Shown here in pieces: positions 1,779 to 54,140 of a DNA stretch of 64,000 nucleotides. Origin of the DNA: Isurus oxyrinchus (Eukaryota); assembly GCA_026770705.1 (NCBI GenBank), contig JANJGN010000026.1:30008001-30072000 (forward strand), written 5' to 3'. Each line of letters begins with the position of its first letter. Within the stretch, counting starts at the first letter, position 1. The position numbers and the translations under genes were made by a program. The notes beneath the pieces were generated by a model. The model worked only from the letters and a program-made list of their open reading frames with translations, did not search any database and had not been told where the DNA came from.

Positions 1779-1803
1779 CACGTCACGGTTTGGAGTCACT
1801 TAC

Positions 1804-4936: not shown

Positions 4937-5028
4937 CGTCTGCGACAGTCACCACCGTTCCGGATCCATCGACATATTTATAAACCAACCACAGTGATGC
5001 AGCTTTCAATCATCCTGATACAAGAATT
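4937..5028 (-). other. NTCRJ: NAR-TCR J (4937-4989) with 23-RSS, cassette A
   Basis: Same as 27547-27638. Confidence 0.88.
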
Positions 5029-5369
5029 ACCGGCTCTTCAATTTACCGCGGACGCATCACCTGATAGTCACCCTATTTTTCATTATTCCAGGGGGTTAGA
5101 TCAATAACCAATATTTAGTGTTTCACAGCCTCCGTCGGTTCGAACTGTTCTTTGTGAGACTCCAAGCTCTTCGCAATTGGCCCAGGAACACGTAGAAACT
5201 TCATAGAAACTGAGGAAAATGTCAAAGAAACATAACAAAAATAGAACATTAGAATGTAATGAAACTAAACTAAAGCGATGATAACATCAATCCAACAATT
5301 TAACATCCGGGTCCGCAGCATATATATTTTAATTGTACAGATGTAAATGGTCGGGTCTCATTCATTGTG

Positions 5370-5658
5370 AAATTCTTGTACGTGTATTTGGCTTTACAGT
5401 AATAGGTGGCGGTATCTTCAACTTTCACATCCCTAATTTCAAGCGAAAATGTATTTTTTGCCCTGTTCGTCCACACAACAAATCTCCCTCCGCCGGGGAT
5501 CCGCTCCCACTTTGTCCCACTCTGTGTTTGTCTGAAGAATTGTCCAGCTTGGAAATAATTCCACGAAGCACCAGAGAAAACACAGGTGATGGTGAGAGAC
5601 TGACACTCCTTCCTGGTCACAGCTGCCGGGATCTGTGTCACTGACTGACCGAAAGAGC
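5370..5658 (-). CDS. NTCRV: NAR-TCR V apparently germline-joined to D (cassette A), followed by a 12-RSS (5342-5369)
   Basis: Same as 27980-28268. Confidence 0.88.
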
Positions 5659-5807
5659 CTGGAAATTAAAGAGAGAGAGATTTAATGGGCATTGAGAGCC
5701 AACCCATCCAATGGGGTTAAATCCTCAAATAGTGCTTGTTGTTGGAATGGACTTGGACAGTTTTATGTTTAATCCACACAATGTCGGATTGATTGATCTG
5801 TACTCAC

Positions 5808-5850
5808 TGGGTAAACAGACGCAAAGGATGCAAACAAGCAGAATCCCCAT
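5808..5850 (-). CDS. NTCRV: Leader exon of NAR-TCR V(D) cassette A
   Basis: Same as 28418-28460. Confidence 0.88.
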
Positions 5851-9010: not shown

Positions 9011-9016
9011 GACACT

Positions 9017-15735: not shown

Positions 15736-15909
15736 ATCCAAATGGTTGGTAACTTCAGAATGTTTCAGTGCAGAGGGATCTGTGTGTCCTCGTGCATGAA
15801 TCGCTGAAAGCTAGTAGGCAGATACAGTGGTATTGAATAGCAGGGCAGGCTCGAGGGGCTGAATTGTCTCCTCTTGCTCCTGGCTCTTATGTTCTTATGT
15901 TCTAATGTA

Positions 15910-19967: not shown

Positions 19968-20241
19968 GGCTTTTGTACAGCTCTCTCCGTGCTCTTTATT
20001 ACTCTGTGGTGTGTCTGCAATCCCACCATGTTCAGGTTTTTGTACAGCTTTCTCTGTGCTCTGTATTACTGTGTGTCTATAATCCCACCATGTTAGGTTT
20101 TTGTACAGCTCTCTCCGTGCTCCGAATTAGTGTGTGTCTGCAATCCAATGTTAAGATTTGTACAGCGCCCTCCGGTTTCTGTATCACTGTGCACCATGTG
20201 CAGGTTTTTGTACGGCCCTCTCCCTGCTCTGTATCAATGTG
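19968..20241 (-). repeat. Tandem array of five 23-RSS units behind supporting V-delta A
   Basis: Heptamers at 20235, 20185, 20128, 20067, 20000, each 23 nt from a nonamer. Confidence 0.88.
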
Positions 20242-20547
20242 CTGTGCGCCGACTCAATGCACAGTAATACACAGCGGAGTCGCTCAGTTGTAGTTTGGAG
20301 ATCTTTATCCGGCTGATTTTCTCGGCAGGATCGTTAAAAGCAGAAATTCTTCCCTCGGCAGCATTTTCTTTATTCTCCTCTCCTGAAGCGCGCCTCTGAA
20401 GCAGATATTCCGGAACCTGTCCTGGGGACTGACGATACCAGTATGTTGCGTACTGACGGATACATGAATACTCACAGCTTAAAGTAACGGTGTCAGCGGC
20501 AGCAGAGTATTGTAAAGGCGGATTCTGGGATATCAGGAGACTGGAAT
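20242..20547 (-). CDS. STCRDV: Leaderless supporting TCR-delta V (copy A) with CDR1 Cys
   Basis: ...LSCEYSCIRQYATYWYRQSPGQ...AVYYCALSRRT; RSS CACATTG-23-ACAAAAACC. Confidence 0.88.
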
Positions 20548-23350: not shown

Positions 23351-24418
23351 TCATCTGACACGTCATAATACGAGGGAATATAGGCTGTCACTCCTTCATC
23401 TCTTCTCATAGGATAAACCATTTAACTCAGGAAGATGCATGATGAAACTTTGTTCGCTTCCTTCAACGCATATAGATCTTTTCTCATTTATGAATCTAAA
23501 ACTTTACACAGCACACAGACTGGAATCCGGTGCAGTCCTTTCCACACACAATATTTCTACCAATTGGTTTTTACTACCGAGGAGTACTGATTCATCAGCT
23601 CAGGTAGCAGTTCGTACATAGGTGGTAAGAAGCAGGAAGTTTCCTCCCTATGTTTGGGCTGGCGCCATGAGACGCATTGCGGTCTGGAGTTAATATTGAG
23701 GCTTCCCAGGGCAACTCCCTGCTCACTGTATATCACCGTGCAGCCACTTCTGGGTCTATCCGGCCGGTGGCACAGGACATACACAGGGATAGTGATGGTG
23801 CTGGATAAGACATTGTACATTATGATTCCGTGAGCTTGACTCTGCCAGGTTGTTGCTTGACAAACATGTGAGAAAGCTCTCCCAGTTTTCCCACATGCCT
23901 CCAGATGTTAGTAAGGGGGACATTGCAGGATGGACAGGCCTGGGTTTGCCATTCTCATTTCCGAAGCCTAAGCAGATTGCCGGTGGTGTGCCAAGTGATG
24001 TGGTCCATGTTCCATCCTTTTCTTTGAGACTTAGTAGCCATTTGATTCAAATGAGTAGCTTGCTCGGCCATCATTTCACCAAGTGCTTAAGAGTAAACCA
24101 CAACACTTTGTGTCCGACGTCATATGTAGTTTAGACCAGGTAAGAACAGTAGATTTCTTTCCATTAAGCAGAGTATGGTGCTGGGCAGCTCGAAACAATC
24201 GGCAGTAGTTTCATGATCACCATACTAAGAATAGCTTTTAACTCCTGGTGCTTGGATTCCACCAGCTGCTGCGGTGGGATTTGAACCAGGGTTAGCACAC
24301 AGAGGATTGACAGGGTGTTTGGGTTTCTAGTCTAATGATATTATCACGAGGCCACTCCTCCCCATGCAGATTATTTGCCTGGATATTTTGCAACACGTCG
24401 CGGTTTGGAGTCACTTAC

Positions 24419-24679
24419 CAGCTGTGACAGTCACCTCTGTCCCAGATCCGACTACGTAACCATCTTTCCAAACGGGACCACATGCATATTTATACTGAGC
24501 TTTGCAGTAATAGGTGGCCGTTAGAACCGAATCACAGAACAGGTTTAAGACCCCAGACAGTGTCTGTAATTGGGATGGACTCGGGCAGCTTTATCTTAAT
24601 TCCACACAATATCGTTTTGTTTGATTGGTAGCCACGGGGTAATCAGGCACACAGAGTAAAAAACAAACTAAATTCCCAT
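24419..24679 (-). pseudogene. Deleted relic of the germline-joined VDJ (ATYYCKAQYKYACGPVWKDGYVVGSGTEVTVTA, 24419-24521) plus dead leader (24636-24679)
   Basis: Colinear with 47789-48324 but lacks 276 bp including the splice acceptor; leader has TAG at codon 4 and a frameshift. Confidence 0.88.
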
Positions 24680-25584
24680 CCTTCTGCTTCCCTGAGCTAA
24701 TAGTTTGTATGACGAAGAGTAGGAGGTTGCAGCAATAAAAATAGAAAATGCTGGAAAATTTCAGCAATTCTGGCAGCGTCTGTGGCGAGAGTAACAGCGT
24801 TAACATTTCCAGTCGCTGTGCAGTGCTACTGTTGCTAGGCCAGCAACCTAGGGGCGCAGGGTAATATCCTGAGGTCCCGGTTTCGGGTTTAACCAAGGCA
24901 GATGGTGGAGTTTGAATTGAATAAAATTCTGGCATCAAACGTCTAATAGGATGACCATAGAACCATTCTCGATTGTTGTAAAAACCCATCAGGTTCACTA
25001 ATAGTTTTTAGGGAAGAAATTCTGCCAATCTTACCTGGTCTGGCCTACATATGACTCCAAGCCCACAGTAATGTTGTCTCTGAAATGCCCGGATCGCCAA
25101 TAAATACTGGCCTTGCCAGTAGCGCCCACATCCAAAGAATAAATAAAACGTGTTGCCAGAACTGCTGAGCTTTTTTTCCCCAGCATTTTCTGTTTTTATT
25201 TCAGGCTTCCAGTATCCGCAGTGTTTTGCTTAGGTATCGGAGAGTGCAGCTCTGGACTGCTCAGGGAGACTAGAACTCGGAGCTGGACTGAAATATTTTA
25301 GACAGTACAATTGATTTGCCGAAAACGGTGTCCCGCAGATCATTGATGAGCCGCCCCATTCCCATCTCTCTGGTTGCGTGTTTTCTGAACAAGTGACAGG
25401 TTTAAAAACTGAACCAGCAGGTTCATGTTGCTTCTTTCGGTCTGGAAGCCTGATCTGAAGTCCCCTCTCCCATTTGTCTGGTGTACCGTTGCTGGCGGGA
25501 TGGGGCGAGGGAGGTGGAATTGTTTCTATTAGGAAAGTCTGCCTTCCTCATTCTCCCACAACAATGAGATTTCAGGTGCGTCCA

Positions 25585-26960
25585 GGTGCCCTCTCCAGTG
25601 CAATCACATCCTTCCTATAATGTGGTGATCACAACTGCACGCAGAACGCCACTTGTGGCCTAATCAGCGTTTTATATACTTTCAGCATAACCTCCCTGCT
25701 CTTGTATTCTATGCTTCGGCAAATAAAGACATGCAACCGGTTTGCCTTGTGAAACACCTTATCGACCTGTCCCGCTACCTGAAGGCAATGTGGATATGCA
25801 CACCAAGGCCCCTCTGATCTTCATTAGTTTCCAGGACCCTGTCATTCATCATGTAGTCCCTTGTTTTATTAACCCTCCCCAAGTGCATTACCTCACACTT
25901 TGCCGGGTTGAATTCTATTTGCCACTGACCAGCCCATTGATATCCTTGCGCAGTTTACAGCTATCCTCCTCACTATTTATTGCCCTTCTAATTTTCTTGT
26001 CATCCCCGAAATTCTTGATCATACCCGCTATATTTAAGTCCAAATTATTTATGTACACTGCAAAGAGTAAGGGCACCAGCATCGAGCCCTACGGAAGCCC
26101 ACTGGAAACAGACTTCCAGTCACAGAAAAATCCCTCTACTATCACCCTCTGCTTCCTGCCTCTCAGCCAATTTTGGATCCAACTTGCCACTTTGCCTTGA
26201 GCCCCATAGGCTCTTACTTTCTCGACCAGTTTGCCATGAGGGGCCTTACCAAAAGCCTTGCCAATGTCCATGTTGACCACATCAAATGCATTGCCGTCAT
26301 CAGCACTCCTGGTTACCTCTTCAAAAAATTCGATCAAATTTTCCAAACGCAACCTTCCCTTGACAAATCCATGCCGACTATCCCTGATTAATCACTGTCT
26401 CACCAAGTGCAGATATATTCTATCCCTCAGAATTCTTCCTAGTAATTTCCCCACCACTGAGGCTAAACTGGCTGGCCTGTAGTTTCCTGGTTTAACCCTT
26501 CTTCCCTTTTATAATAGTGGGATAACGTTAGCAGTCACCCAGTCCTCTGGCACTTCACCTGTCAGGGCCACTGATACCTCTTCCCTTGCCTCTGTCAACG
26601 GCCTGGGGTACATCTCACCCAGGCCTGCCGATGTATTCACTTCTAAGGCCGCTAAACCCGCTATTACCTCTTCTGTCTCTACGTTAATTACCTCTAATAT
26701 TTCATTGTCCTCCAACCTCAACGTCCTTTTCCATTGTGAAGACCGACGCAAAGTATTCATTGGGGACTGTACCTAATGTCCTCCGGTCCATGCACATATT
26801 ACCTAGTTATTCTCTTGCTCTTCATACCTCCGTATTTTCTCTTTCCCTTCGGGTTTTCCTTTACTCTACCCACCAATGCTTTCTCGTGCACCCTCCCAGC
26901 TTTCCTAAGTTCCTTTTTAAGTACCCCCCTGCACTTTTTATACTTCTAAAATTTTATGCC
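25585..26960 (-). mobile_element. CR1-type LINE RT fragment (duplicate)
   Basis: As 2965-4350. Confidence 0.85.
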
Positions 26961-27546
26961 ACCTGGCCCTACAACAGGATCGCTTGCATTGGAAACCCTT
27001 TGTGTTGTGCTCCTGATTCCTTGTCTCTGCACTATGGAAAGGGCCGCTGCAGATGTCCAACTGGTGGTCGGCAGCACTTGGTTCATCTCCTGATAAATCG
27101 TTTCACATTGACCGTCTCAGGTAGAAAAATTGCGTCCAGGATAGAATTCTGTGTTCTTGATACTTTGGACACAGGGACAGTCAGAGTTGACACTGAAAGC
27201 GGAACTTAGAGTGGCGCCAACCTGTCCTCATTTATCAGGAGAGAGATAGAGAGAGAATCCAAGCTGCTCAAGGGAATACCTCTACTGATATCCCCATTAA
27301 ACAATGGTCTGGGTGGTGGCAACCTATTCCCACCCTCCAATCACCTGTTCCCTGAGGATGTCGCACATTCTTCTGCCAGGTTCATGGCTGGGCCGGAACA
27401 CAGCATTATATTCTGTGCCAGAATGTAAAGCCATAATGGGAAATATCCATTTTAGTGAGATTGAGGTAATACTGCGCACAATAATAAACAGACCATGAAC
27501 ATTAACCGGGACGATTTATATCAAAGCAGGGTTTAGAGCGTCTTAC

Positions 27547-27638
27547 CGTCTGCGACAGTCACCACCGTTCCGGATCCATCGACATATTTATAAACCAACC
27601 ACAGTGATGCAGCTTTCAATCATCCTGATACAAGAATT
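27547..27638 (-). other. NTCRJ: NAR-TCR J (27547-27599, LVYKYVDGSGTVVTVAD) with 23-RSS, cassette B
   Basis: AATTCTTGT-23-CACTGTG, GTAAGA donor. Confidence 0.88.
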
Positions 27639-27979
27639 ACCGGCTCTTCAATTTACCGCGGACGCATCACCTGATAGTCACCCTATTTTTCATTATTCCA
27701 GGGGGTTAGATCAATAACCAATATTTAGTGTTTCACAGCCTCCGTCGGTTCGAACTGTTCTTTGTGAGACTCCAAGCTCTTCGCAATTGGCCCAGGAACA
27801 CGTAGAAACTTCATAGAAACTGAGGAAAATGTCAAAGAAACATAACAAAAATAGAACATTAGAATGTAATGAAACTAAACTAAAGCGATGATAACATCAA
27901 TCCAACAATTTAACATCCGGGTCCGCAGCATATATATTTTAATTGTACAGATGTAAATGGTCGGGTCTCATTCATTGTG

Positions 27980-28268
27980 AAATTCTTGTACGTGTATTTG
28001 GCTTTACAGTAATAGGTGGCGGTATCTTCAACTTTCACATCCCTAATTTCAAGCGAAAATGTATTTTTTGCCCTGTTCGTCCACACAACAAATCTCCCTC
28101 CGCCGGGGATCCGCTCCCACTTTGTCCCACTCTGTGTTTGTCTGAAGAATTGTCCAGCTTGGAAATAATTCCACGAAGCACCAGAGAAAACACAGGTGAT
28201 GGTGAGAGACTGACACTCCTTCCTGGTCACAGCTGCCGGGATCTGTGTCACTGACTGACCGAAAGAGC
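27980..28268 (-). CDS. NTCRV: NAR-TCR V apparently germline-joined to D (cassette B), followed by a 12-RSS (27952-27979)
   Basis: ...KECQSLTITC...TATYYCKAKYTYKN then CACAATG-12-CCATTTACA, followed by sequence homologous to the D-J spacer of the 53 kb cassette. Confidence 0.88.
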
Positions 28269-28417
28269 CTGGAAATTAAAGAGAGAGAGATTTAATGGGC
28301 ATTGAGAGCCAACCCATCCAATGGGGTTAAATCCTCAAATAGTGCTTGTTGTTGGAATGGACTTGGACAGTTTTATGTTTAATCCACACAATGTCGGATT
28401 GATTGATCTGTACTCAC

Positions 28418-28460
28418 TGGGTAAACAGACGCAAAGGATGCAAACAAGCAGAATCCCCAT
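28418..28460 (-). CDS. NTCRV: Leader exon of NAR-TCR V(D) cassette B (MGILLVCILCVCLP)
   Basis: 43-nt open exon, GTGAGT donor. Confidence 0.88.
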
Positions 28461-31400
28461 CGTTCTGTTGCCTGCAGCAGATGACTAATCTTTCGGGGAG
28501 CTGGGAACTGCAGTCCTAAACTGTTCTGTAAGAGCGGACCTCAGAGCTTGACTGAAATACTTCAGGAGAACCGAGCTGACTTTCCGAAGTCAGAGATCAT
28601 TGATGGACTGCGCGGGCCCCGGGTCTCTGGCTGTGTTTTTTGTGAATAAACGATAGGAGTAAAGAGAGAGCCTAGAGCTTTCTGTCGCTTTATATGTCTG
28701 AGGAGGAGATGTGAAATCTCCTCCCACATTCGTCTGATGTACAGGGGTGGCGGAGGGGAGTTGTTCTGCCAGTACAGCATGCCACCCTCCTTTCTCTAAA
28801 AGCGCCGAGAACATCTCTGCTCTCCGCTCTAATTCCAATAGTGCCAGGGATTTATTGACATTAAAAAAAGACTTTCACAGGATGTGGGCGACTCTTACTA
28901 AGCCAGCGTACATTGGCTAACCCTAACTGCCCTTGTCAAGGTGGTGGTGAGCTGCCTTCTTGAACAGCTGCAATCCATATCGTGTAGGTGCACCCACATT
29001 GCTGTGAGGGATGGAGTGCCAGGGTTTTGACTCAGCGAAGGTGAAGGTACAGTGATATATTTCCAAGTCAGGATGGTGTGTGGCATGAAGGGGACCTTGC
29101 ATCTGGTTGTGTTTTCATGCATCAGCGCCTTTATCCTTTGAGGTGGTATAGGTCGCAGGTTTGGAAGGTGCTGACGAAGGAGCCAAGTTGAATTCTTGCA
29201 GTGCACCCTTGTGGCTGGTAAACACTGTTGCCATTGTAAATTGCGATGGAGGGAATGAATGTTTGTGGAAGGAGGGCCAATCAATCAGGTGATTTGCCCT
29301 GGGTGGCGTTGAGCTTCTTCAGTTTTGCACGAACTACACTCATCCAGACAAGTGGGGAGTCTTCCATCACACTTCTTACTTGTGCCTTGTAGATGGTGGA
29401 CAGGCTTTGGAGAGTCAGGAGGTGTGTAACTCCTCTCAGAATTCCCAAACTCTGACTTGCTCATGAGCCACAGTATTTATATGGTTAGTCCCGTTCCGTT
29501 TCTGGTCAATGGCAAGCCCCAGCATGTTGAGAGCGATGGCTACATCTGCAGAACGTGTTGGCGTGACCTGGACTAAAATTCTGATCCGAAGGACGGCGCC
29601 TCAGGCATGGCAACGTCTCTCGAACGTACAACTGAGCATCAGGTTACAATATATGGCATCCAATGACAATGTCACAAGGATTTAGTCTCTATCACTCGTT
29701 TAAATAAATGTTTCCTGCACCTCTGTGATTAGTTTTTAAAATAATGACTGAATTCATTAATGATTTATTTCCACATCTGCCATCTATTGGGTTTTTTTTT
29801 ATCCTTGCATTGACAGCGAATGAAGCGGCACGTTGATGGGCAACAGACGTTAGGGGAACACTGAGCGTGTGGTTCGTTTAAGAAATCACAATGAGACATG
29901 GTCTGTTGATGAAATGAAATCTGCACATTGTGTATAAACTGTCTCTGACGCAGCAACACACTCTGACCAAAACCCTGTGAACAGGCTGCGGTCAAAAGCT
30001 CTAGAAAACTGACAAAGGTGATGTGGAAGAGCTGTACAACGTTATAAGAAAGCATGGAAAGGGTTGTAATGGATCCCGTTCATAAATGCATTTGATTAAA
30101 AAAACCTTCAATTGATCGTCAGGACTGGTGATGATGAAATTTAATCGATTGTCATAAAAACACATCTGAGTCACCAATATTCTTCAAGGAAAGAATAAGG
30201 AAACCTGCCATCCTTACCTTTGTCTGAGTCATATGTAACACCAGGACAGCAGCAATATGGTTGCCTCCTAACTACTCTCAAGGGCTTTTAGGAATGTGCA
30301 GCAAATATTAACCTTGCCATAGAGGCCAACATCCAAGGAAAATTAAAAAAAAACAAAGCCCACTGCTCACAGTAGTGGTTCATTTGCCACAGTCCTAATG
30401 AGCACCAAATTAATAACAAGTTGGCAATTATTTCATTTCTACGTAAAACAACTGCCTATCTCATATTATAAATAACCCCTTCCCTGCCTCCCAATTTACA
30501 GCTCAACATGAAAATTACCAGAGAAGTAATCACTTTTTAGGAACCCTCAGCTGAGAAGCTAATCACTTGCTATTAGTGATAGAACTTGCAACGAAATTTG
30601 GGCCTCTACTCCTGTTTTACCAGGCCCTGATGATTATTCTACTCATCCTGTCTTCACAATTATTATATTAGGCTACTTGTCTGTTATTGTTTCACCAGTC
30701 CATGAATATTATTGCACAAGTCCTGTATCATCAATTAATACACGAGGCTCTGTATCTGTCACTGTTTCATTAAACCATAATTATTGTAATACTTACCCAT
30801 GAATCCTTGATTATTACACTAGGCTGTTGCTCCTGTTAATATTTAACCAGGTTCTGATTATTGATGTTATGGTCCTTGTCTCCTTGATTGATACACTAGG
30901 CCCTTGCCTCTCTTAGTATTTTATCAAATCCTTAACATTATTAATATTAATATACTGAATATTAACATACTGAATAATGTTATTATTACTCTTTCTCCTT
31001 GATTTATATAAAGCGCTAGGCCTCTGTTCATATTTTACAAGGTGTTTATTTTTTTAATGATCCCTTCCTCCTTGATTTATATAGGAGGTTCTATCTCTGT
31101 TAGTATTTCACCAGGCCCTAATTATTACCTCATTTGCTCCTGTATCCTGAATTAGCTTCTCTCTGTATTAGTATTGCACCAGGCCCTTATTATTATTGAA
31201 TTGGTCTCTGGTTCCTTGGTTTTTACACCCAGGTTCTGCCCCTGACCCTTATCAGTGTTTCACTAGGTCCTGAATATTATTTACCAGTCCTGACTCCTGG
31301 ATTAAAGCGCATGATCTCCATTCAAGTTATTAGTACTCTAGATCCTATGTCGGAGTCTATTACAATTCATCCTCGCTCAGGCATTGCTGCACTATGTGCT

Positions 31401-34298
31401 GCCTCTGTTTATATTACACTCTGCCCTTTCTCAGTCGGCATTGCACGAGCCCATCATGTTTTGTTTCCATTACACTAGACGTTGTATCAGTTGGAGCTGC
31501 AGTGAGACCATGTCTCTGTTTATATTACATTAGATCCTGTCTTTGTTCTAATTCAGCTAGACGATTTCTCTATATTACACCAAACACTGGCTGGATTATT
31601 ATCGTACTGAACATTACCTTGACACTGGGCGGAATAACACGAGCACTCGCTGATGGGGTGGCGGGGGCGTGGGGGTGCGGGGGGGGGGGGGGGGGGCGGT
31701 GGTGTTGGGGTTCCGAACCCTCAAGTAGGTGGCATTCCGACTTCTGGGGCCGCCGTCGGCGGGTACCCGATGATACGCTAATTGTGCGACTTAGCAGCAA
31801 AGGCGCTTTACAGGCCATGATGCTTGGCCTAAATAGCCAAGTGGTTATGGTACTGGGTTTGTAACCCCCAGATCAAGAGTTCAAATCTCACGATGGTGAA
31901 ACAATGTAACTTCATCTGAAACAGGTGGAAACGGGTTTGTGCTCAAAAGAGTTACAGGCCATGATCCTGCCCAAAGAGTGGTATCCAGTCTCGGAAGCAG
32001 CAGGCACCTGGAACCGTTAGGTCAGCATTTTAAAGGTGTCAGATAACCGATCAGATGGCCGGGTTTCTCTCTCATAGTGAAGATTTATGCATCTTCCGGT
32101 CAGATAAGTCAATTTAAATTTAGCTAAAATAAAAGGAAAGTTCTGCACATGCTGGAAATATGGAATAAAAACCGAGAATTCTGGAAAAACGCAGCAGGTC
32201 TGGCAGCATGTGTGGAGACAGAAACAGAGTTAACATTTCGAGTCTGTATGACACTTCTTCAGAGCTGAAGAGAGGTAGAAATGTGATGGGGCTTATACAG
32301 TTGAAGAGAGAAGTTGAATCAGGTGGAGAAAAATAGAAACTCAGAGACAGGTGAGGCTCAGGAGACGTTTGACAAACTTGTCATGGATCCCCTGTCTTCA
32401 ATCATATAAAACCCATTACATTTCTAGCTCTCTTCAACTCTAAAGAAGAGTCATACGAACTTGAAACGTTTACTTTCTCTCTCCACAAGGACTGCTGAGT
32501 ATTTTTCAGCATTTTCTGTTTTTATTTTAAACTTTACCTAATCTCTGCTAGTTATGTCAAACTTCATAAATGGAGGAAGTTTTAAAATTCTGCAAGTCTC
32601 CCACCTTTTGGCTTGAGGAGTTGTACGTGTATTACATGCTGCCATGCATTGATGTCTGCACCATCGGAGTGAGCAGATGGGCGTTCTGAAAGGGGCAAAG
32701 CTGCCTCCAGATTGAATGATTCCATCCTTGCTGCTCTCCTGCGTGCAGCACACGATTGACTGTACCAGCTCATGCCGAGAACTGGGATGAGGAGAAAGTC
32801 CAGGAAGACTCGCGCTGCGTGGGAAGAGATAACCAACATGGCAATAGTGTTGAGGCCGTGAAGAAGACTTGGCCCCAGTGCCACATAACGCTCAATGGCC
32901 TCACGAGGTCCATTGCAGCAACGAGGTCTCTGCCTGTCTACCTTGGGCTGGCATTAGTTTGTCTGCGCCTCTGCTGAGGGTTTCTGCGTTCCTCCTGGTT
33001 CTCTGGATCTGGCACTGCTCTGCCCCCTTCCTGAGGAACAAAAGCATCATGTGCCTCCCTGTATTCCCTTCTTCATCTCATCCTTCCCCTCCTCCAAATC
33101 CTCCTTTTCTCCTCACTGGAGGTTATGTCCCCAACGATCCCCATTTGCCTCAGATGCTTTTGACCCCTCACCCTTGGGCAATGTACAAGGAAATAATCCA
33201 TCAAAAGAGCCCTCTGAATCGGAGGAGAGTTCTCCTCAAGAAAATGTCCAAAACGCTCCTCTGTCTGTTCAAATGAGCTGTCCCTCAAGCCAGTAGAGTT
33301 TGAATTTTGGCCTCAGCTGCAGTTTTAAAACCTGCCTTAACAAACTTTCCCTTAAAAAACGGATGCCTGACCTATCGTAAATGTCGCCTTGAAGTCGTAT
33401 TATTGCCTTCTGGCCGTATAAAAGCAGTGAACTGATTAGTTAATTAGCCGAATTAACTTTTAAATTGATATAATAATAGCGCAGGCGGTTGCCAACTTTT
33501 TTGACAAGACCACGGGATGTGTCATCAGAACCTGGCGTGGTGACATCGTAAACGTCGCCCGAAGTCATCAGGCCCCAGAATTGGTCCCGAGAAACGCTCC
33601 CGATCTGGGAGAGTAAAATGCAGCTCACCATCCCTGTCACTTCTGCACTTAGCGCTTTTTCTCCGAGTCATGGCCATTTACCACCTGGTGTGACTACGTG
33701 TTGCTTACATTACACGAGGCCCGCCTCAGTAATCACTGCACGACGAACACACATAAGAACATGGGATTTAGGAGCAGGAGTAGGCTAATCTGCTCCTCGT
33801 GCCTGCTTCGCCATTCAATTAGATCATGGCTGATCTGAATATAACCTCAGCTCCACGTTCCTGCCTACACATATATCCCTTCACCCCACCCCGACCCGCC
33901 GTCCCTCCGTTAATCAAGAATCTATTTAGCTCTTCCTTAAAAATATTCAAAGACTCTGCTTCCACCGCGTTTTCAGGGAGAGAATTCCAATAATGTTATG
34001 TACATTAGTTGCTTCATGACAATAATGTAAACAGCGACATAAAAAGAGACTCACACAGAAACATCTAAGGCAGAGCCTAGTGTAATATAAACTCACACAT
34101 GGTCCAGTGGAATAACTGACGCCTAGTCCAAAATAAATAAAGATATTTAGCATCCTGAGCGGTATTGACAGGATGGATATGAAGAGGACAATTCCTCCAA
34201 TGGAAGAATTTAGAACTAGGGGCCACTGTTTAAAAATAAAGGGTCATTCATTTAAGACAGAGATAAGGAGCTTTTTTTCTCTCTCACCTCTGTCTTAA

Positions 34299-37200
34299 AT
34301 GTTGATGCAATGAGAATTAACATTCAATGGGAGTGGTAAGTATAACAAGACAACAGTTTTGGGTATGCAGAGCAGAAGCAACGTGAAATCAAAGGCAGCT
34401 GCAAGTCTCCAACTGGCTCTACAGGAAACAACTGAAAAGAATGTCATTTTGAATTCTTCAGATGAAAATGCTTCGCCTGGTGTCTGGTTAAGTCTAGAGG
34501 TTTCTGTTGCCTTAATGGAGATTAGTTTGGGAATTTGTTCAAAGTTAGGATAGTAGTAATTTGTAGCCATATATATCTTTAACCTGTGTAAATTAGTAAA
34601 ATTTTCATTTAGCCTAACGTAAAACCTTGAGAACTGATGGTCTTATTCCTAAATTTAGAGTTTCAGCTCAAAGGTAACACTTCGAATTATAGGTATTACA
34701 GTTGTTTAAAGTTTCCCTCTGGGGTTTTTAAATGATTCCAATTTACCAACTGCATCGGTCATAACAATTTGGGGGCTCTGCTGGGAGAAATTATATTTAT
34801 AATTCCTCGATTGGTTAGCAATTGGTGAATCTTAGGCCAACAATTAAGAGAGGCATTTTGAATTTAAGAGTTGGTGAGGCATTTTAGAGGTGGTGAAACG
34901 GCACGATGGCTTTGACTTGTCGGGGAGAAAAAGAGGTAACTCTGATTGGGTTGCAGAGAACCAAAAGTAAGTTAACAGAGTGGGCAGATAAGTTAAAATT
35001 GGATTTACCTGCGGCGGCAAGGAAATCAAATACAGTTAAATGTATAGCACAGCATCTACATTTGGGAGTGAAACCTGACACTAGTGAGTCGCAATTGGAG
35101 GTAGCAAGACTTCAGTTGCAAATGAAGAAGCTTGAATTTGAACAAGCAAAGGAACTGAAAAACCTTGAATTTGAATAAGCAAGGGAATTTGAAATTATGA
35201 AGATGAGGAAGGAGGAAAGAGAAGGAGAGAGAGAAAGCGAATTCGAACTGAAAATGGTGGCAGTTAGAAAGGAGATGTCAGTAGGAAAAAATAATTTATC
35301 TCCAGAGTAGAACCCAGTTAGGATATATTTAGATTTGTACAACATCTTTCAAAGTTTGAGGAAAAATATATTGAACCATTTTTATTTCATTTGAGAAGAT
35401 AGTTAAACAGATGAAATGGCCACAGAAAAACTGGACTTTATTTTTACTGTATAAGTTGTTAGGTAGGAGGCTTGAAGTATATGGTTCTCTTTCAGAAGAA
35501 TTGTTGGTGAATTACGATGTGGTAAAAAAAGCTATTTTGAATGCATAAGAAATGGTCCCTGAAACATACAGGGCATAAAATTAGGAATACGAGAAAACAG
35601 CAAGGGCAAACATATTGAGTTTGAAAGAGTAAAACAACGTAAATTTGACCAGTGGATAAAGGCATCAAAGGTAAAGGCAACCTATGCAGCTTTTAGGGAA
35701 GTCAATACTTTGGAAGAATTTGAAGATTGACAGTGAGAGCTCATGTGGGGGAACAGAGGGTTGATTCTGTAGGGCAAGAGGCAGAAATAGCTGATGATTA
35801 TGAGTTAGTTCATGGAGCTAAACCGTTTAGGCCATCAAGCTTTCAAATTGGAAAAGGTTAAAAAGTGAGCAGGTGAAAGGAAGGGAGGTAGTCAGGAAAG
35901 AGGAGTAGCTGGAAGCTGCCTGGAAGTTTTTTTCTCACAACAAAGAGGAAGGTAGAAGTCACATTCGAAAATTGAAGCGTTTTCATTTAATAAAGTGGGG
36001 CACACGAAGTTAATGTGTTGGAGACAGCAGGAAAAATCTGTAGAAATTATTGGAGTGCATAAAGATCTGGAAGTAAAATTATTGGGGGTTCTGAGGTTCA
36101 AGCACAGAAGAAACCAATAGTTTGTGTACAGGTGAAACAGGCAGAATCAGTGAAATATAAGAAGTGGGGTTTTGTTCACAGTTCACTTAAGGGAATTCTG
36201 AGGAGCAGGCTGTAGAAATGTTTAAAGACTGTGCGTGAATGGAAAGTCTTTCCATGTGTACAAGGTGTAGTACGTATCGATGTTAAAATTTTAAGACACG
36301 CAGGGGCTAGTCCACCATTAATGTTGTGGGATCGTGATATTTCTTGTTCACAGGGAGCGTTACAGGAGAAGATAATAAATAAGAGGGATTCATGGAGATG
36401 CTAAATCTATTCCGTTGTGGAAGGTAAGTGTAAAGAGCAGGTGGAAGCCATGTGACATTATAGTTGTAGTGGTGGAAAATTGCCCATTGCAGGGTTTCAA
36501 TTTATTTTGGATAATAATATAGCTGAATGGCAAACGTGGGTGATGCCTGTGGTAGTTCAGCAGCCTATAGAAGTGTTTTAAACAGAAGTGCTGCAAAAGC
36601 AACAGCCTAAATTATTTCCTGATTGTATTATAATGAGATCACATGCCCACAGGGAAGAACAAAATAAACAAGATAAGCAGGTAGTCCAAAGGCAAGAAAA
36701 AGGTGTCGAAATCCAATTATCTGGCACTGTATTTGAGAATATTCTTCAGGAAGAAGGAATGCAGGACAGTTCAGTTGAAGTGTTAACTCAAGAAGATTAG
36801 TGGAGTTACAGAAAAATGATTTTTAATTAAAACAGTTATATCAGAAAACTTATTCAGAAACCGAAGCAAAATGTTGAGGGAATATATTAGCGAGAAAATG
36901 GTGGTCGGATCATGTCTGAGCAGATGAAAGCTGGAGGTAGATCAATCATATTGTTATCCTATAAGGGTATAGGAATGAGATTCTGAGGATTGCTCATGAA
37001 ATGCCAATGGGCAGAGGGAGGGGGTGGGGGGTCTGGGTGGAGAGGGTGCCATTTCGCAATTAGGAAAGCACAGGAAAAGATGCAGTGGTTATTTTCTGCC
37101 AGGGTTGTATTCCACTTCTATAGAGCTTGTCATATATGTCAAGTAATAAAGAAGCCAGAAGCAGTGATTAAGCCGGCACCTTTAATCCCAATACCAGCAT

Positions 37201-38340
37201 TTGAAGAACCTTTTACCAGAGTCTTGATTGATTGTGTAGGACCCCTCCCTGACACTAAACGTGGAAATCAGTATTTATTAACAATAGTGGATGCACCTCT
37301 TATGTTTTCTGAAGCGATATCTTTAAGAAATGTTACAACTAAGAAGATGGTGGAGGAGTTAATGAAATTGTTCACAAGATATGGCTTACCTAAAGAAATA
37401 CAATCAGATCAGCGGTCAAATTTCATGTCGCAGCTGTTTAAGAAAGTAATGAACAGTTTGGGGATAAAACAATTTAAGTCAACAGCTTATCATCCGGAGC
37501 TTTGGAAATGTGGAATCAAATCTTAAAAATTGTGATAGGAGCATACTTTCTTGATTATGCACAGGATTGGGGTCCAGGAATTCCATATTTGTTATTTGCT
37601 ATTAGAGACGCGCCTAACGCATCGACTGGTTTCAGCCCTTTTGAACTAGTTTGTGGTCATGAGGCAAGGGACCACTGAAATTGATTCAGGAGGAATTGGT
37701 GGGTCATAATTCAGAAACCTCTCTCCTGGATTACGTATAAAATTTCAGAGAAGATTAAACGGAACATGTGAGTTGGCTCGGGAACATTAAAATATTTCAT
37801 AGCAAGTGACGAAATTGAAAGCAGATATGAAGGCTAAAATTCGCAGTTTTGCTTCTGGAGAGAAAATATTAGCTTTGTTCCCAGTTCAAAGTGATTCATT
37901 AAATGCAAGATTTTGTGGGCGTTACAGGATTAAAAAGAAATTCAGCAAAGTAAATTGTTTAATAAATATTTCAGACACACGAAAGGAGCAGAAGGTGTGC
38001 CATGTAAATATGCTTAAAAAGTACTTTGACAGGGAAGAGGAACAAAAACAGCTGGATGATGAGAAAGAAGTAGAAGTGCAGAACTCTGAAAGTGATTTTC
38101 CTCTAATCAAATCTTCCAACCAAGTGTCACAGTGGTTTGGAATATCTATTGCAGTCACACACACCTATTTGTGGAAATAAGTTGTGGAAGGCACACATAG
38201 CTTCACATAGTGTGTGTATATAAACGTCATATTCAATAAGGCAACAACCTTTCAGATTAAGTCCGACAAAGTTTTCACAAGTGCAAAATGAAATTGATTT
38301 CATGCTTCAAAATGATATAATTGAGCCTAGTTGCAGTATT
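34299..38340 (+). mobile_element. Decayed Gmr1-like LTR retrotransposon (duplicate)
   Basis: As 11688-15735. Confidence 0.8.
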
Positions 38341-38344
38341 ATCC

Positions 38345-47788: not shown

Positions 47789-48133
47789 CAGCTGTGACAG
47801 TCACCTCTGTCCCAGATCCGTCTACAGAACCATCTTTCCAAACAGAACCACATGCATATTTATACTGAGCTTTGCAGTAATAGGTGGCCGTGTCTTCAAC
47901 TCTTACATCCCGAATTTCCAGCGAAAAAATATTTTCTGCTTTATTTATCGACACAACAAATCTTCCCCCACTGGAAATCCACTCCCGCTCTGTCTCGGTC
48001 TGGGTTTGTCTGAAGAAATGTCCGTCCTCTAATCGATGGGAATTACCTTTGAAAGCACAGGTGATGGTGAGAGACTGACACTCCTTCACGGTCACCGCTG
48101 CCGGGGTCTGTACCACTGACTGACTGAAAGAGC
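47789..48133 (-). CDS. NTCRV: Germline-joined NAR-TCR VDJ exon, intact, phase 1-1, 345 nt
   Basis: Acceptor ttaatttccag; SFSQSVVQTPAAVTVKECQSLTITC...TATYYCKAQYKYACGSVWKDGSVDGSGTEVTVTA; donor GTAAGT; no internal RSS or intervening DNA. Confidence 0.93.
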
Positions 48134-48281
48134 CTGGAAATTAAACAAAGAGACTTTAATTGGCCGTTAGAACCGAATCACAGAACGGGGTTAAGACCCC
48201 AGACAGTGTCCGTAATTGGGATGGACTCGGGCAGCTTTATCTTAAGTCCACACAATATTGGTTTGTTTGATCGGTAGCCAC

Positions 48282-52831: not shown

Positions 52832-52918
52832 CGGCTGTGACAGTCACCACCGTCCCGGATCCATCCGCATATTTACCACCACAGTGACTCCGCTCTCAGT
52901 CTCCCCGGTACAACAACC
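52832..52918 (-). other. NTCRJ: NAR-TCR J segment (52832-52879, GKYADGSGTVVTVTA) with 23-RSS and GTAAGT donor
   Basis: GGTTGTTGT-23-CACTGTG upstream, GxGT-VTV motif, phase-1 donor. Confidence 0.9.
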
Positions 52919-53233
52919 ACCAACAACTCGACCTGGCGGGAAATCATCATCAGACAGTAGAAACTGCCCAATTATTCAGCGGATTTAAATAAATAAACAA
53001 TATTCAATGTTTCAAAGTCTCTGTCAGTTCAAACTGTTCTTTGTGAGGCCCTGAGCTCTGAGTAAATGGCCTCCAGAACGAGATGTTCGCTTCATATAAA
53101 CCGAGAATAATATCAAAGAAAGATAACTGAATGGTGGAAATTACCATGAAATTGAACCAGGTTCCAGCGATAATAACATCAACCCGACAATTCACTATCC
53201 GGGCCCGGAGAATTTATATTTAAATTATACAGA

Positions 53234-53306
53234 TGTGTTTGGTCAGGTCTCTCCCACTGTGACTCCCCCATCCATACACACAGTGTTAAAAGTCAGTATA
53301 AATTCC
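53234..53306 (-). other. NTCRD: NAR-TCR D segment (53262-53278, TGTATGGATGGGGGAGT) flanked by two 12-RSS
   Basis: GGAATTTAT-12-CACTGTG | 17 nt | CACAGTG-12-CCAAACACA; perfect heptamers, divergent nonamers. Confidence 0.85.
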
Positions 53307-53628
53307 CCCGGGCACTTGGTGAGATTTGGGAACATTAGTTAAACAGCGGAGACTGCGGTTCCCGGTTCCAGCTGTTAGACCAGTATCACATCTGGCGTTG
53401 GGGGTTTGTAACCAGGATCGGTCATTCCCAATCTCCATTCACTGACACCAATCCTGGGAAAAACATCACATCTGCACACACTGGGCATTTATAGAACTCA
53501 AGATGTTAACAGCAATAAGCCAATCTCATTATAAACTAGATTGTGGGGCAGACGGTGTGAGGCGGAACTGTGGGGCTTTAACTGCAGAACTCCGCTTTTT
53601 TCATTTGTTTCTGTGATAATCTGCAGTG

Positions 53629-53666
53629 AGTTTTTGTATCGCGGGAAGCCGAGGCCCATCACTGTG
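53629..53666 (-). promoter_or_regulatory. V 3' recombination signal (23-type; CACAGTG-22 nt-ACAAAAACT)
   Basis: Consensus heptamer, near-consensus nonamer, 22-nt spacer counted. Confidence 0.9.
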
Positions 53667-53949
53667 GATCTGTAGTACTGAGCTTTACAGTAATAGGTGG
53701 CGGTGTCTTCAACTCCCACATCCCGAATTTCTAGCGAAAATGTCTTTTCTGCTTTATTCACCGACACAACAAATCTCCCCGCGCTGGAGATCCGCTCGCG
53801 CTCTGTCCCGATCTGGGTTTGTTTGAAGAAATATCCCGTTTGGAAATTATACCACGAAGCACCGGAGAAAACACAGGTGATGGTGAGAGACTGACACTCC
53901 TTCCTGGTCACCGCTGCCGGGGTCTGTTTCACTGACTGACTGAAAGAGC
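53667..53949 (-). CDS. NTCRV: NAR-TCR (IgNAR-like) V segment, unrearranged, open frame
   Basis: Acceptor ttaatttccag; SFSQSVKQTPAAVTRKECQSLTITC...GYFFKQT...GRFVVSVNKAEKTFSLEIRDVGVEDTATYYCKAQYYR; short FR2/CDR2 as in vNAR, non-canonical FR1 Cys (KEC) typical of NAR-TCR V; RSS follows. Confidence 0.92.
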
Positions 53950-54097
53950 CTGGAAATTAAACATTGAGAGTTTAATGGGCCATCGGAGCCGAACCAGAGA
54001 ACGGGGTTAAACCCCCAGACAGTGTCTGAAAATGGAATGGACTCGGGCAACTTTATATGAAATCCGCACAATGTCGGTTCGTTTGATCGGTACTCAC

Positions 54098-54140
54098 GGG
54101 GTAAACAGATACACAAGGTGAAAACAAGGAGGATTCCCAT
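54098..54140 (-). CDS. NTCRV: Leader exon of unrearranged NAR-TCR V (MGILLVFTLCICLP, phase-1 donor GTGAGT)
   Basis: ATG at 54140, 43-nt hydrophobic signal-peptide exon, canonical donor; splices in frame to the V exon at 53949. Confidence 0.9.

What the first reader, a model, noticed from the sequence alone, without database searches (positions are those of the whole stretch)
27547..28460. Partly pre-joined cassette: NAR V fused to D with a 12-RSS, needing only one V(D)-to-J step
Seen: here and at 4937-5850 the V runs into CACAATG-AATGAGACCCGA-CCATTTACA, which matches the D 3' RSS of the 53 kb cassette (CACAGTG-GGAGAGACCTGA-CCAAACACA), and then into the homologous D-J spacer. The V 23-RSS, the ~350-bp V-D spacer and the D 5' RSS are gone. 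The post-Cys end is 6 nt longer than in the unjoined V. Leader, frame and J 23-RSS are intact, so the 12/23 rule is still met. The window therefore holds unjoined, VD-joined and VDJ-joined states of one gene family. Alternative explanation: a heptamer-to-heptamer deletion rather than a RAG coding joint.
Basis: partly seen in the sequence, partly recalled or inferred. Interest (0 to 1): 0.8.

Follow-up and report, generated by a model that had tools for sequence, protein, structure and literature searches.

The report
D-less shark NAR-TCR V-J cassette
In a shark T-cell-receptor locus, one antibody-like "NAR" V gene has inherited a layout in which the D piece and two of the four recombination signals are gone, so a single V-to-J cut-and-paste step could build its binding loop; whether V and D were truly fused, and whether the gene is still used, is not shown.

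Summary
On the minus strand at 27547-28460, and in a 100% identical copy at 4937-5850, an intact NAR-TcR leader and V run straight into a 12-spacer RSS. That RSS, and the 313 bp after it, are homologous to the D 3' RSS and D-J spacer of the unjoined V-D-J cassette at 52.8-54.1 kb. About 405 bp are missing: V 23-RSS, V-D spacer, D 5' RSS and D.

The layout is germline. Contigs of a second, coded species, from two studies, span it without indels (13 substitutions in 867 nt).

The locus is NAR-TcR, not IgNAR. A leaderless, phase-matched supporting delta V lies 7 kb downstream.

"V fused to D" is not shown.
- The 26-nt end after the Cys codon has no likeness to the free D.
- It is only about 2 nt longer than V ends inferred for unjoined relatives.

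Three origins stay open: a RAG VD coding joint with almost no D left, a RAG hybrid joint that swapped the RSS, or a heptamer-to-heptamer microhomology deletion. A 7-nt microhomology deletion did occur 3 kb away.

Function is untested. The 12-RSS nonamer is weak (4 of 9) and no RNA was found.

The scan has already noted at least eight D-less NAR-TCR cassettes elsewhere in this genome.

The parts
28418..28460 (-). Leader exon of the D-less NAR-TcR V (ATG at 28460; 43 nt; phase-1 donor GTGAGT at 28417-28412)
   Evidence: The translation starts MGILLV, as in the database NAR-TcR models.
27980..28268 (-). V exon with 26 nt after the Cys codon (28008-28006). V-set fold; Cys in the a-b loop (KEC); FFRQ in place of WYRQ
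   Evidence: translation. (Pfam V-set, E 3.5e-09, 37.3 bits against a cut-off of 26)..
27952..27979 (-). 12-spacer RSS flush with the V end: heptamer CACAATG, 12-nt spacer, weak nonamer CCATTTACA (4 of 9 to consensus). Positional homologue of the D 3' RSS of the unjoined cassette
   Evidence: 20 of 28 identical to 53234-53261. Not found at 3 or fewer mismatches.
27639..27951 (-). 313-bp spacer homologous to the D-J spacer of the unjoined cassette. This is the stretch that one V-to-J join would excise
   Evidence: 219 of 311 identical; no heptamer-like site. (score 111 against -57.5 +/- 8.5).
27600..27638 (-). J 23-spacer RSS: heptamer CACTGTG, 23-nt spacer, nonamer 6 of 9 to consensus
   Evidence: 3 mismatches to consensus; 14 matches in the window against 0.80 expected..
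27547..27599 (-). J segment (53 nt; ...YVDGSGTVVTVAD) ending in a phase-1 splice donor GTAAGA (27546-27541)
   Evidence: No difference in the second species.
4937..5850 (-). Identical second copy of the whole cassette, in the neighbouring 22.6-kb tandem unit
   Evidence: 1201 of 1201 identical for 4800-6000 against 27410-28610..
20242..20547 (-). Leaderless supporting TCR delta V exon 7 kb downstream of the J. Phase-1 acceptor; CDR1 Cys shifted by 2 residues. It is followed by a 23-RSS at 20203-20241 and further RSS-like repeats
   Evidence: sequence. (V-set, E 1.4e-15).. The same J-to-delta-V junction appears in NCBI models.
52832..54140 (-). Comparator: the unjoined NAR-TcR cassette. It holds leader, V, a 22-spacer RSS, about 350 bp, D 5' 12-RSS (53279-53306), D (53262-53278), D 3' 12-RSS (53234-53261), J 23-RSS (52880-52918) and J
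47791..48134 (-). Comparator: the fully joined VDJ exon. Its own leader carries a stop at codon 4 and the donor reads GTGGCT
   Evidence: The CDR3 holds a D-like core, 9 of 11 to the free D, but 130 of 2000 shuffles do as well.

Best explanation
This is a germline-inherited, D-less NAR-TcR cassette of the TCR delta locus. The V coding end abuts the 12-RSS that sits 3' of D in the unjoined paralogue. That RSS faces the cassette's own J 23-RSS across 313 bp.

Origin (inferred). A deletion of about 405 bp has ends that coincide with RSS borders. I think it was most likely made by RAG in germ cells, by one of two routes:
- a standard V-to-D coding joint that left almost no D, or
- a hybrid joint between the V coding end and the D 3' signal end. 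This pairing is 12/23-legal. Both RSSs point the same way, so a hybrid joint deletes the DNA between them.

How it would work (inferred).
1. In thymocytes one 12/23-legal V-to-J deletion removes 27979-27600. An untrimmed join is in frame: 2 nt plus 1 nt make one codon, and no stop arises.
2. The phase-1 J donor then splices to the leaderless delta V at 20547.
3. That delta V must itself rearrange to TCR delta D and J segments outside the window.

The result would be a three-domain delta chain whose NAR CDR3 has one junction instead of two.
For: - Anatomy and positional homology.
- The 12/23 pairing is intact.
- No hidden D or heptamer lies in the spacer.
- Germline status: one contig in each of two studies of a second coded species spans 27350-28216 with 13 substitutions and no gaps. 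The source species' own reads agree.
- NAR-TcR context: leader, a-b loop Cys, no Trp in the WYRQ motif, and a leaderless phase-matched delta V with a Cys in CDR1. These criteria are as quoted in PMC1845163. NCBI models of basking and white shark show the same J-to-delta-V junction.
- RAG has plausibly acted on this family in the germ line, because a fully joined VDJ exon lies in the same window.
- Germline VD-J joining and germline hybrid joints with RSS swapping are on record for shark Ig genes: PMC4279169 and PMC2193153.
- The frame is open in both species despite about 14% nucleotide divergence (35 of 260) and 23% protein divergence from the nearest in-window paralogue.
Against: - No D-derived nucleotides can be shown.
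- The V end is only about 2 nt longer than ends inferred for unjoined relatives. A classical VD joint would therefore need 13 or more nt trimmed from a 17-nt D, stopping at the heptamer.
- A RAG-free 7-nt microhomology deletion gives the same product, and one such deletion is present 3 kb away.

Against current function:
- The 12-RSS nonamer matches 4 of 9, with the A-run lost.
- The J nonamer matches 6 of 9.
- The RSSs are no better conserved between cassettes than the spacer: 20 of 28 and 27 of 39, against 70%.
- The two species differ in leader plus V at 6 nt, 4 of them amino-acid changing, and at about the non-coding rate.
- This V departs from three nearly invariant framework residues and is the most divergent of 13 lamniform V domains compared.
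- No database model is its orthologue; the best is 79%.
- No RNA run held it.
Confidence: 0.55

Rival explanations
1. A RAG-independent deletion removed the interval. The V-RSS heptamer and the D 3' heptamer are 7-nt direct repeats about 400 bp apart. Replication slippage or microhomology-mediated end joining between them removed one heptamer and everything between. The complete V end was left flush with the D 3' RSS, with no D contribution.
For: - The product predicted is exactly what is seen.
- There is no D likeness.
- The V end falls within about 2 nt of the lengths inferred for unjoined V ends.
- A 269-nt deletion bounded by a 7-nt repeat (ACGGCCA) removed the body of the joined VDJ exon in both neighbouring units, so this kind of deletion does get fixed here.
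Against: - The end points fall exactly on a 12/23-legal pair of RAG cleavage sites, in a lineage known for germline RAG activity (PMC4279169; PMC2193156).
- A fully joined VDJ exon lies in the same window.
- At 26 nt the V end is longer than all of the roughly 17 inferred unjoined ends (16-24 nt).
- Other windows' notes report D-like ends in sister cassettes. These are unchecked leads.
Confidence: 0.33
2. One reading: a classical germline V-to-D coding joint. The last nucleotides before the heptamer are a trimmed or diverged D.
For: - It is the commonest documented kind of partial joining in shark Ig clusters (PMC4279169).
- The architecture fits.
- The end is 6 nt longer than in the in-window unjoined V.
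- One ENA protein (P0003) and a Mustelus model (P0034) read as a V end plus about 11 extra nt before a heptamer. This hints that true VD-joined NAR-TcR genes exist elsewhere. It is an amino-acid-level inference.
Against: - The D 3' end next to an uncut RSS should survive untouched. Yet the 8 nt before the heptamer match the free D's 3' end at 2 of 8, while the adjacent spacer is 70% identical.
- The whole end matches D no better than chance.
- Basking-shark V ends of 24 nt resemble this one.
Confidence: 0.3
3. Whatever its origin, the cassette is now a decaying relic. It rarely or never recombines, and is kept intact only by recent duplication and homogenisation.
For: - Both nonamers are weak.
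- Divergence between the two species looks neutral, with 4 of 6 coding changes replacing an amino acid. One of them, in the second species, falls on a nearly invariant Asp.
- Three departures from nearly invariant framework residues, and the longest branch among the V domains compared.
- The partner delta V has lost the family's CDR1 Cys position, and its heptamer reads CACATTG.
- No annotated orthologue and no RNA.
Against: - The open frame, both Cys residues, the splice sites, both heptamers and the J motif are intact in two species, with no indel in 1301 nt.
- The frame has stayed open over a divergence of about 14% in nucleotides (35 of 260) and 23% in protein from the nearest paralogue.
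- Six differences are too few to measure selection.
- The RNA runs on offer were tiny (22-155 million letters) and their kind was only guessed.
Confidence: 0.35

Closest known systems
Partly germline-joined (VD-J) immunoglobulin heavy-chain clusters of cartilaginous fish
   Same: Inherited loss of the V RSS, the V-D intervening DNA and the D 5' RSS. A 3' RSS still faces an unrearranged J. Split and joined copies of one family lie side by side. The origin is attributed to RAG in germ cells (passages of PMC4279169, and PMC2193156).
   Different: This cassette sits in the TCR delta locus (NAR-TcR), not in an Ig cluster, and no D-derived nucleotides are recognisable. I found no report of germline joining for NAR-TcR in searches. 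The primary NAR-TcR papers were not held.
Germline hybrid joint with RSS swap in a horned-shark V-D-D-J-C cluster (as described by Lewis and Wu 2000)
   Same: A RAG product in which an RSS is exchanged between coding ends. It was proposed as the way 12- and 23-spacer RSSs were swapped in evolution (passages of PMC2193153). Here the V would have traded its 23-RSS for a 12-RSS.
   Different: The documented case is an inversion between two D segments. Here the outcome would be a deletion that also removes D. The product cannot be told apart from a microhomology deletion with the data in hand.
Canonical NAR-TcR (doubly rearranging TCR delta of sharks and chimaeras)
   Same: Leader-bearing NAR-type V with an a-b loop Cys and no Trp in the WYRK motif. 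A J that splices to a leaderless supporting delta V with a Cys in CDR1 (criteria quoted in PMC1845163; tested).
   Different: Canonical NAR-TcR is described as using separate VDJ rearrangements for both V domains. Here the NAR domain has no free D and needs one V-to-J step. The partner delta V has its CDR1 Cys two residues off the family position.
TCR mu of marsupials and monotremes
   Same: A three-domain TCR chain in which one V domain has lost somatic diversity. The supporting V is germline-joined in marsupials and D-less in platypus (passages of PMC3457774).
   Different: TCR mu evolved independently. The simplified domain there is the membrane-proximal supporting V. Here it is the distal, presumably antigen-binding NAR V.
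IgNAR type III clusters with germline-fused D1-D2 (recalled, from no call)
   Same: Partial germline joining in the sister NAR V family that limits CDR3 diversity.
   Different: That is a D-D fusion inside an Ig cluster with recognisable D sequence.

Membership tests
NAR-TcR (TCR delta with an N-terminal NAR V) | The NAR-type V has its own typical leader peptide | tested here: met
   ATG at 28460, a 43-nt leader, a GTGAGT donor and a phase-matched acceptor. The leader aligns with database models.
NAR-TcR (TCR delta with an N-terminal NAR V) | Cys in the a-b loop, and no canonical Trp in the WYRK motif | tested here: met
   The translation reads ...RKECQSL... and ...FFRQ.... The criteria are quoted from PMC1845163.
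NAR-TcR (TCR delta with an N-terminal NAR V) | The J splices to a supporting delta V that lacks a leader | tested here: met
   The J ends in a phase-1 donor (27547/27546). The delta V exon starts at 20547 behind a polypyrimidine-CAG acceptor, in phase 1. NCBI models show the same junction. I did not search exhaustively for an upstream leader exon.
NAR-TcR (TCR delta with an N-terminal NAR V) | Conserved Cys in CDR1 of the supporting delta V | tested here: inconclusive
   A Cys is present, but two residues N-terminal of the family position, which here holds Arg. The copy at 43913-43629 and the 11 lamniform models keep the family position.
NAR-TcR (TCR delta with an N-terminal NAR V) | The NAR domain is assembled by V-D-J rearrangement | tested here: not met
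   There is no free D and no heptamer-like site between V and J. The cassette at 53 kb does meet this feature.
NAR-TcR (TCR delta with an N-terminal NAR V) | Expressed as a TCR delta chain in T cells | not testable with these tools
   No run on record as RNA held the stretch. Nothing from the one RNA-guess run that was laid fell on it.
Germline-joined VD-J antigen-receptor cluster | V RSS, V-D intervening DNA and D 5' RSS are absent while the 3' RSS and J stay unrearranged | tested here: met
Germline-joined VD-J antigen-receptor cluster | Inherited, not somatic | tested here: met
   The same junction appears in contigs of a second coded species from two studies, and in the source species' reads.
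Germline-joined VD-J antigen-receptor cluster | Recognisable D-derived nucleotides at the junction | tested here: not met
   Best match to the free D is 5 of 11, and 1611 of 2000 shuffles do as well. The end is about 2 nt longer than inferred unjoined V ends.
Germline RAG hybrid joint (RSS swap) | A coding end joined directly to the partner's intact RSS, the partners being a 12/23 pair oriented so that the hybrid joint deletes | tested here: inconclusive
   Geometry and spacers fit: a V RSS with a 22-nt spacer and a D 3' 12-RSS, both pointing downstream. The V end is full-length and flush with an intact heptamer. The product is the same as that of a microhomology deletion.

The most novel reading that the evidence does not exclude
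A RAG hybrid joint in the germ line exchanged this V's 23-RSS for the 12-RSS that lay 3' of D, and threw D away. One step thus turned a V-D-J T-cell-receptor cassette into a V-J cassette. The same 64 kb also holds the unjoined parent type and a fully joined VDJ exon. That would make it a living series of RAG reshaping a TCR locus in inherited DNA, covering RSS swapping, D loss and pre-joining. Until now such events have been documented only for shark immunoglobulin clusters.
Probability: 0.2. Interest if true: 0.7.

Novelty: new variant of a known kind. Interest (0 to 1): 0.45.

Why it matters
NAR-TcR is described as a doubly rearranging receptor whose distal, antibody-like domain gets its diversity from V-D-J joining. 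A heritable D-less version has one junction instead of two, so its binding loop is shorter and partly fixed. That is the trade-off discussed for germline-joined shark antibodies.

It also bears on whether germline RAG activity, well documented for shark Ig clusters, has remodelled a T-cell receptor locus, and by which route: coding joint, hybrid joint or none. This window is useful because the split, D-less and fully joined states lie side by side with alignable flanks.

The case is weakened because the decisive points are open. Neither a D contribution nor present use is shown. The same class has already been noted many times elsewhere in this genome.

Tried and rejected
IgNAR cluster, rejected. 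The J ends in a splice donor that leads to a leaderless delta V, not to constant exons. The database relatives are two-V NAR-TcR-type models.

Assembly artefact or somatic rearrangement, rejected. Independent contigs of a second species carry the same junction.

Hidden D in the spacer, rejected.

The D-less state as ancestral, with the V-D interval inserted later: judged unlikely. V ends inferred for bamboo, epaulette, zebra and basking shark relatives run into a heptamer. Where the read-through shows the spacer, it is followed by 23-spacer-type sequence. This rests on amino-acid read-through only.

The 6 extra nt as proof of D, rejected.

Identity of copies A and B as a sign of selection, rejected. 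The central 7.5 kb of the unit has 11 differences, against 54 and 75 in the flanks. The cassette is simply inside a homogenised block.

Led nowhere:
V-end lengths are therefore inferred from protein read-through.
- The first and third protein word searches gave only 4 and 8 hits.
- The search of earlier findings returned nothing by sequence and nothing on unjoined cassettes.
- The primary papers were not held: Criscitiello 2006 and Ott 2021. I did not look up Deiss 2019 (recalled). They or their supplements may already describe D-less cassettes.
- I did not compute an RSS information-content score, because no model was at hand.
- I did not use the big representative search, the structure tools or the RNA-family tools, because the protein family was not in doubt.
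Full report
WHAT IS THERE

All genes discussed lie on the minus strand. At 28460 an ATG opens a 43-nt leader with a GTGAGT donor. A 149-nt intron follows, then a V exon (28268-27980) that is a V-set domain (Pfam E 3.5e-09, 37.3 bits against a cut-off of 26).

After the second Cys codon (28008-28006) come 26 nt, encoding KAKYTYKN plus 2 nt. Directly behind them stand the heptamer CACAATG, a 12-nt spacer and the nonamer CCATTTACA (27979-27952). Then come 313 bp of spacer, a 23-spacer RSS (27638-27600) and a 53-nt J (27599-27547). The J encodes the ...DGSGTVVTV... motif and ends in a phase-1 donor.

The stretch 4800-6000 is identical to 27410-28610 at 1201 of 1201 positions.

WINDOW LAYOUT

A self-comparison shows tandem units of about 22.6 kb. 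Segment 1777-15832 matches 24392-38437 at 99.0% over 14,070 columns, and two further blocks match at 98.3% and 96.9%. A third, more diverged unit starts near 47.8 kb.

tblastn with the V exon finds four full NAR-type V exons:
- the two identical ones;
- one at 53950-53675 (77% protein identity);
- one at 48134-47856 (69%).

It also finds two 12-residue remnants (24521-24486 and 1906-1871) and a weak V-like hit at 59 kb.

The 53-kb gene is a complete unjoined cassette. It has a V with a 22-spacer RSS, about 350 bp, a D 5' 12-RSS, a 17-nt G-rich D, a D 3' 12-RSS, a spacer, a J 23-RSS and a J.

The 48-kb exon is a fully joined VDJ. Its own leader has a stop at codon 4, and its donor reads GTGGCT.

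THE HOMOLOGY CLAIM

A three-way alignment and pairwise counts show how the cassette matches the unjoined one:
- V exon: 225 of 260.
- Intron: 113 of 148.
- D-J spacer: 219 of 311.
- J: 43 of 48.
- Its 12-RSS against the D 3' RSS: 20 of 28.

The spacer alignment scores 111, against -57.5 +/- 8.5 (maximum -31) in 300 shuffles. The 413 nt from V end to D of the unjoined cassette find nothing in this cassette: local score 13, against 11.7 +/- 1.4 in 100 shuffles. No heptamer-like site (1 or fewer mismatches) lies in the 313-bp spacer.

By consensus alone the 12-RSS is poor. The scan at 3 or fewer mismatches finds only the two RSSs that flank the free D (2 matches, 0.94 expected). I count 1 heptamer mismatch and 5 nonamer mismatches here. 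The J 23-RSS has 3 mismatches and is among 14 matches, against 0.80 expected.

WHICH LOCUS

The J does not lead to constant exons. Seven kb downstream (20547-20242) lies a V-set exon (E 1.4e-15). It has a polypyrimidine-CAG acceptor in phase 1 and no leader, and it is followed by a 23-RSS.

The V has a Cys in the a-b loop and FFRQ in place of WYRQ. These are the features that PMC1845163 quotes for NAR-TcR V and its supporting delta V (passages read).

A word search with a basking-shark model found 75 proteins at E of 1e-10 or below, among 452 candidates. Most are models of about 230-235 residues from elasmobranch genome annotations, reading leader, NAR V, J, delta V. They have the same J-to-delta-V junction.

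The closest named relatives are Cetorhinus and Carcharodon models, so I infer the source to be a lamniform shark.

GERMLINE STATUS

Of 24 runs listed, 20 hold half or more of the sampled words. Four runs are of one sample of organism A. Sixteen runs, from five studies, are of organism B at about 0.55 of the words. Four RNA-guess runs hold next to none.

I laid 4 of the 24 on 27350-28650.
- The organism-A run gives a contig over 27350-28213 with one other letter. That letter is the base of copy A.
- The two organism-B runs, from different studies, each give a 1301-nt contig covering 27350-28216, with 13 other letters and no gaps.
- No indel or joint was reported in any run.
- The RNA-guess run laid nothing.

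The layout is therefore inherited and predates the split of the two species.

Organism B differs at 21 listed positions of 1301:
- none in either heptamer, either RSS spacer or the J;
- one in each nonamer (the last base of the 12-RSS nonamer, the second base of the J nonamer);
- five in the V exon and one in the leader. Four of these six change an amino acid.

The rates are 1.7% in the V exon and about 1-3% in the non-coding parts. Six coding differences cannot measure selection, but they give no sign of constraint.

IS THERE ANY D IN IT?

1. The 26-nt end matches the free D no better than chance. The best match is 5 of 11, and 1611 of 2000 composition-preserving shuffles do as well.

2. The 8 nt before the heptamer match the D's 3' end at 2 of 8, although the adjoining spacer is 70% identical. 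In a VD coding joint the D end next to the uncut RSS should be untouched.

3. Database proteins that read through the V end let me infer where the heptamer begins. The inferred lengths between the Cys codon and the heptamer, in roughly 17 V genes that look unjoined, are 16, 18, 20 (in-window), 21, 22, 23 and 24 nt.

4. Two basking-shark models have 24-nt ends, reading KAQYKYKT and KAQYRYDK, followed by residues that fit the start of the 23-RSS seen at 53 kb. The end here reads KAKYTYKN plus 2 nt.

So the 6 extra nt relative to the in-window V is mostly V-end length variation. At most about 2-4 nt are of unknown origin.

By contrast, the fully joined exon at 48 kb keeps a D-like core. It matches 9 of 11, although 130 of 2000 shuffles do as well. 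A loose end of an organism-B contig shows a variant of that core that I read as 10 of 11.

THREE ORIGINS FIT

(a) A standard germline V-to-D coding joint. This is the known habit of shark Ig clusters (PMC4279169 passages; PMC2193156 passages). It would need the 17-nt D trimmed by 13 or more nt, stopping at the heptamer.

(b) A germline RAG hybrid joint.
- The V RSS (22-nt spacer, 23-type) and the D 3' 12-RSS are a legal pair and point the same way.
- Joining the V coding end to the D 3' signal end therefore deletes everything between them. It gives a full-length V end flush with an intact 12-RSS, which is what is seen.
- Lewis and Wu describe a documented germline hybrid joint in a horned-shark cluster, and propose this route for swapping 12- and 23-spacer RSSs (PMC2193153 passages).

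(c) A RAG-free deletion between the two heptamers, which are 7-nt direct repeats.
- The product is the same as in (b).
- This is not far-fetched. In both neighbouring units the joined VDJ exon has lost 269 nt between two copies of a 7-nt repeat.

My odds are about 0.30 for (a), 0.20-0.25 for (b) and 0.33 for (c), with the rest for other routes. That is a little over one half for a RAG-made event. The notes of other agents speak of D-like ends in sister cassettes elsewhere in this genome. They are leads that I could not test.

HOW IT WOULD WORK (INFERRED)

One 12/23-legal deletion of 27979-27600 joins V to J. An untrimmed join is in frame, because 26 nt leave 2 nt over and the J frame starts after 1 nt. 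The J frame has no stop. The donor at 27547/27546 then splices in phase to the delta V at 20547. That delta V must itself rearrange to delta D and J segments outside the window.

The NAR CDR3 would have one junction and a largely germline-fixed N-terminal half.

IS IT STILL USED?

For:
- The open frame, both framework Cys residues, the splice sites, both heptamers and the J motif are intact in two species.
- There are no indels.
- The frame has stayed open over about 14% nucleotide divergence (35 of 260) and 23% protein divergence from the nearest paralogue.

Against:
- The nonamer matches 4 of 9 and has lost the A-run. The J nonamer matches 6 of 9.
- Divergence between the two species looks neutral.
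- This V departs from three nearly invariant framework residues. Its mean identity of 70.7% to 13 other sequences is the lowest of the set, apart from one chimeric model; the other 12 sequences range from 73.4% to 81.0%.
- None of the 81 stored proteins is its orthologue; the best is 79%.
- Its partner delta V has the CDR1 Cys shifted by two residues, and its heptamer reads CACATTG. The 43.9-kb copy keeps the family pattern and a perfect RSS.
- There are no RNA data.

I put present function at roughly 0.55-0.65.

COMPARISON WITH WHAT IS KNOWN, AND NOVELTY

Partial and full germline joining and a germline hybrid joint are established for shark Ig genes. NAR-TcR is described as using separate VDJ rearrangements for both domains. 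TCR mu offers a convergent case of a simplified V domain.

Four full-text searches found no report of a germline-joined or D-less NAR-TcR gene:
- NAR-TcR with germline-joined: 7 papers.
- NAR-TcR name variants: 64 papers.
- TAILV or NAR-TCR from 2017 on: 117 papers.
- Germline-joined with shark and TCR: 13 papers.

I read only passages of nine of those papers. The primary papers were not held and supplements were closed, so this absence is provisional.

I rate the cassette a new variant of a known kind. It is real, heritable and of moderate interest. Its mechanism is unresolved and its use untested.

The scan has noted the same class at least eight times on other pieces of this genome.

Noticed in passing
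24515-24521 and 1900-1906 (compare 47892-48160): In both 22.6-kb units the joined VDJ exon has lost 269 nt, namely its acceptor and most of the V body. The loss lies between two copies of the 7-nt repeat ACGGCCA, and only the last part of framework 3, the CDR3 and the J remain. The third unit keeps the whole exon.
   Followed up: yes
20242-20547 versus 43629-43913: The supporting delta V downstream of the D-less cassette differs from its 97.5%-identical copy mainly in CDR1 (four amino-acid changes within nine residues). The family's CDR1 Cys is replaced by Arg, and a new Cys appears two residues earlier. Its RSS heptamer reads CACATTG, while the other copy has a perfect consensus 23-RSS.
   Followed up: partly
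43169-43615 and 19968-20241: Behind each supporting delta V lies a tandem run of 23-RSS-like units at 3 or fewer mismatches: eight at 43 kb and four at 20 kb. Across the window there are 14 matches, against 0.80 expected.
   Followed up: partly
1777-15832 versus 24392-38437: Differences between the two tandem units are very uneven: 11 in the central 7.5 kb (4000-11499, which holds the cassette), against 54 and 75 in the flanks. This suggests recent gene conversion or unequal crossing-over, not uniform age.
   Followed up: partly
58900-59200, minus strand: A divergent V-like exon scores below Pfam's V-set cut-off (24.4 against 26 bits), with Leu in place of the conserved Trp. A basking-shark NCBI model (P0031) starts with its apparent counterpart fused to a NAR V, so the neighbourhood seems conserved in lamniforms.
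   Followed up: no
P0009 and P0018 (white shark NCBI models); window 47791-48134: White-shark annotation models contain exons very like the joined VDJ exon here. One 329-residue model strings part of a first NAR-type VDJ domain and a complete second one before the delta V. These are computational models, not transcripts.
   Followed up: no
P0003 (ENA) and P0034 (Mustelus asterias model): Read at amino-acid level, these V genes carry about 11 extra nt between a typical V end and a heptamer. In P0003 a 12-spacer nonamer is possible. They may be true VD-joined NAR-TcR genes in another shark order. I could not fetch the DNA.
   Followed up: no
28186-28273 in read laying: Framework segments of the V exon collect summed contig depth of up to about 17,850, against about 100 for the flanks, in the source species. 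This hints at a very large NAR-TcR V family. The tool warns that this figure is not a copy number.
   Followed up: no
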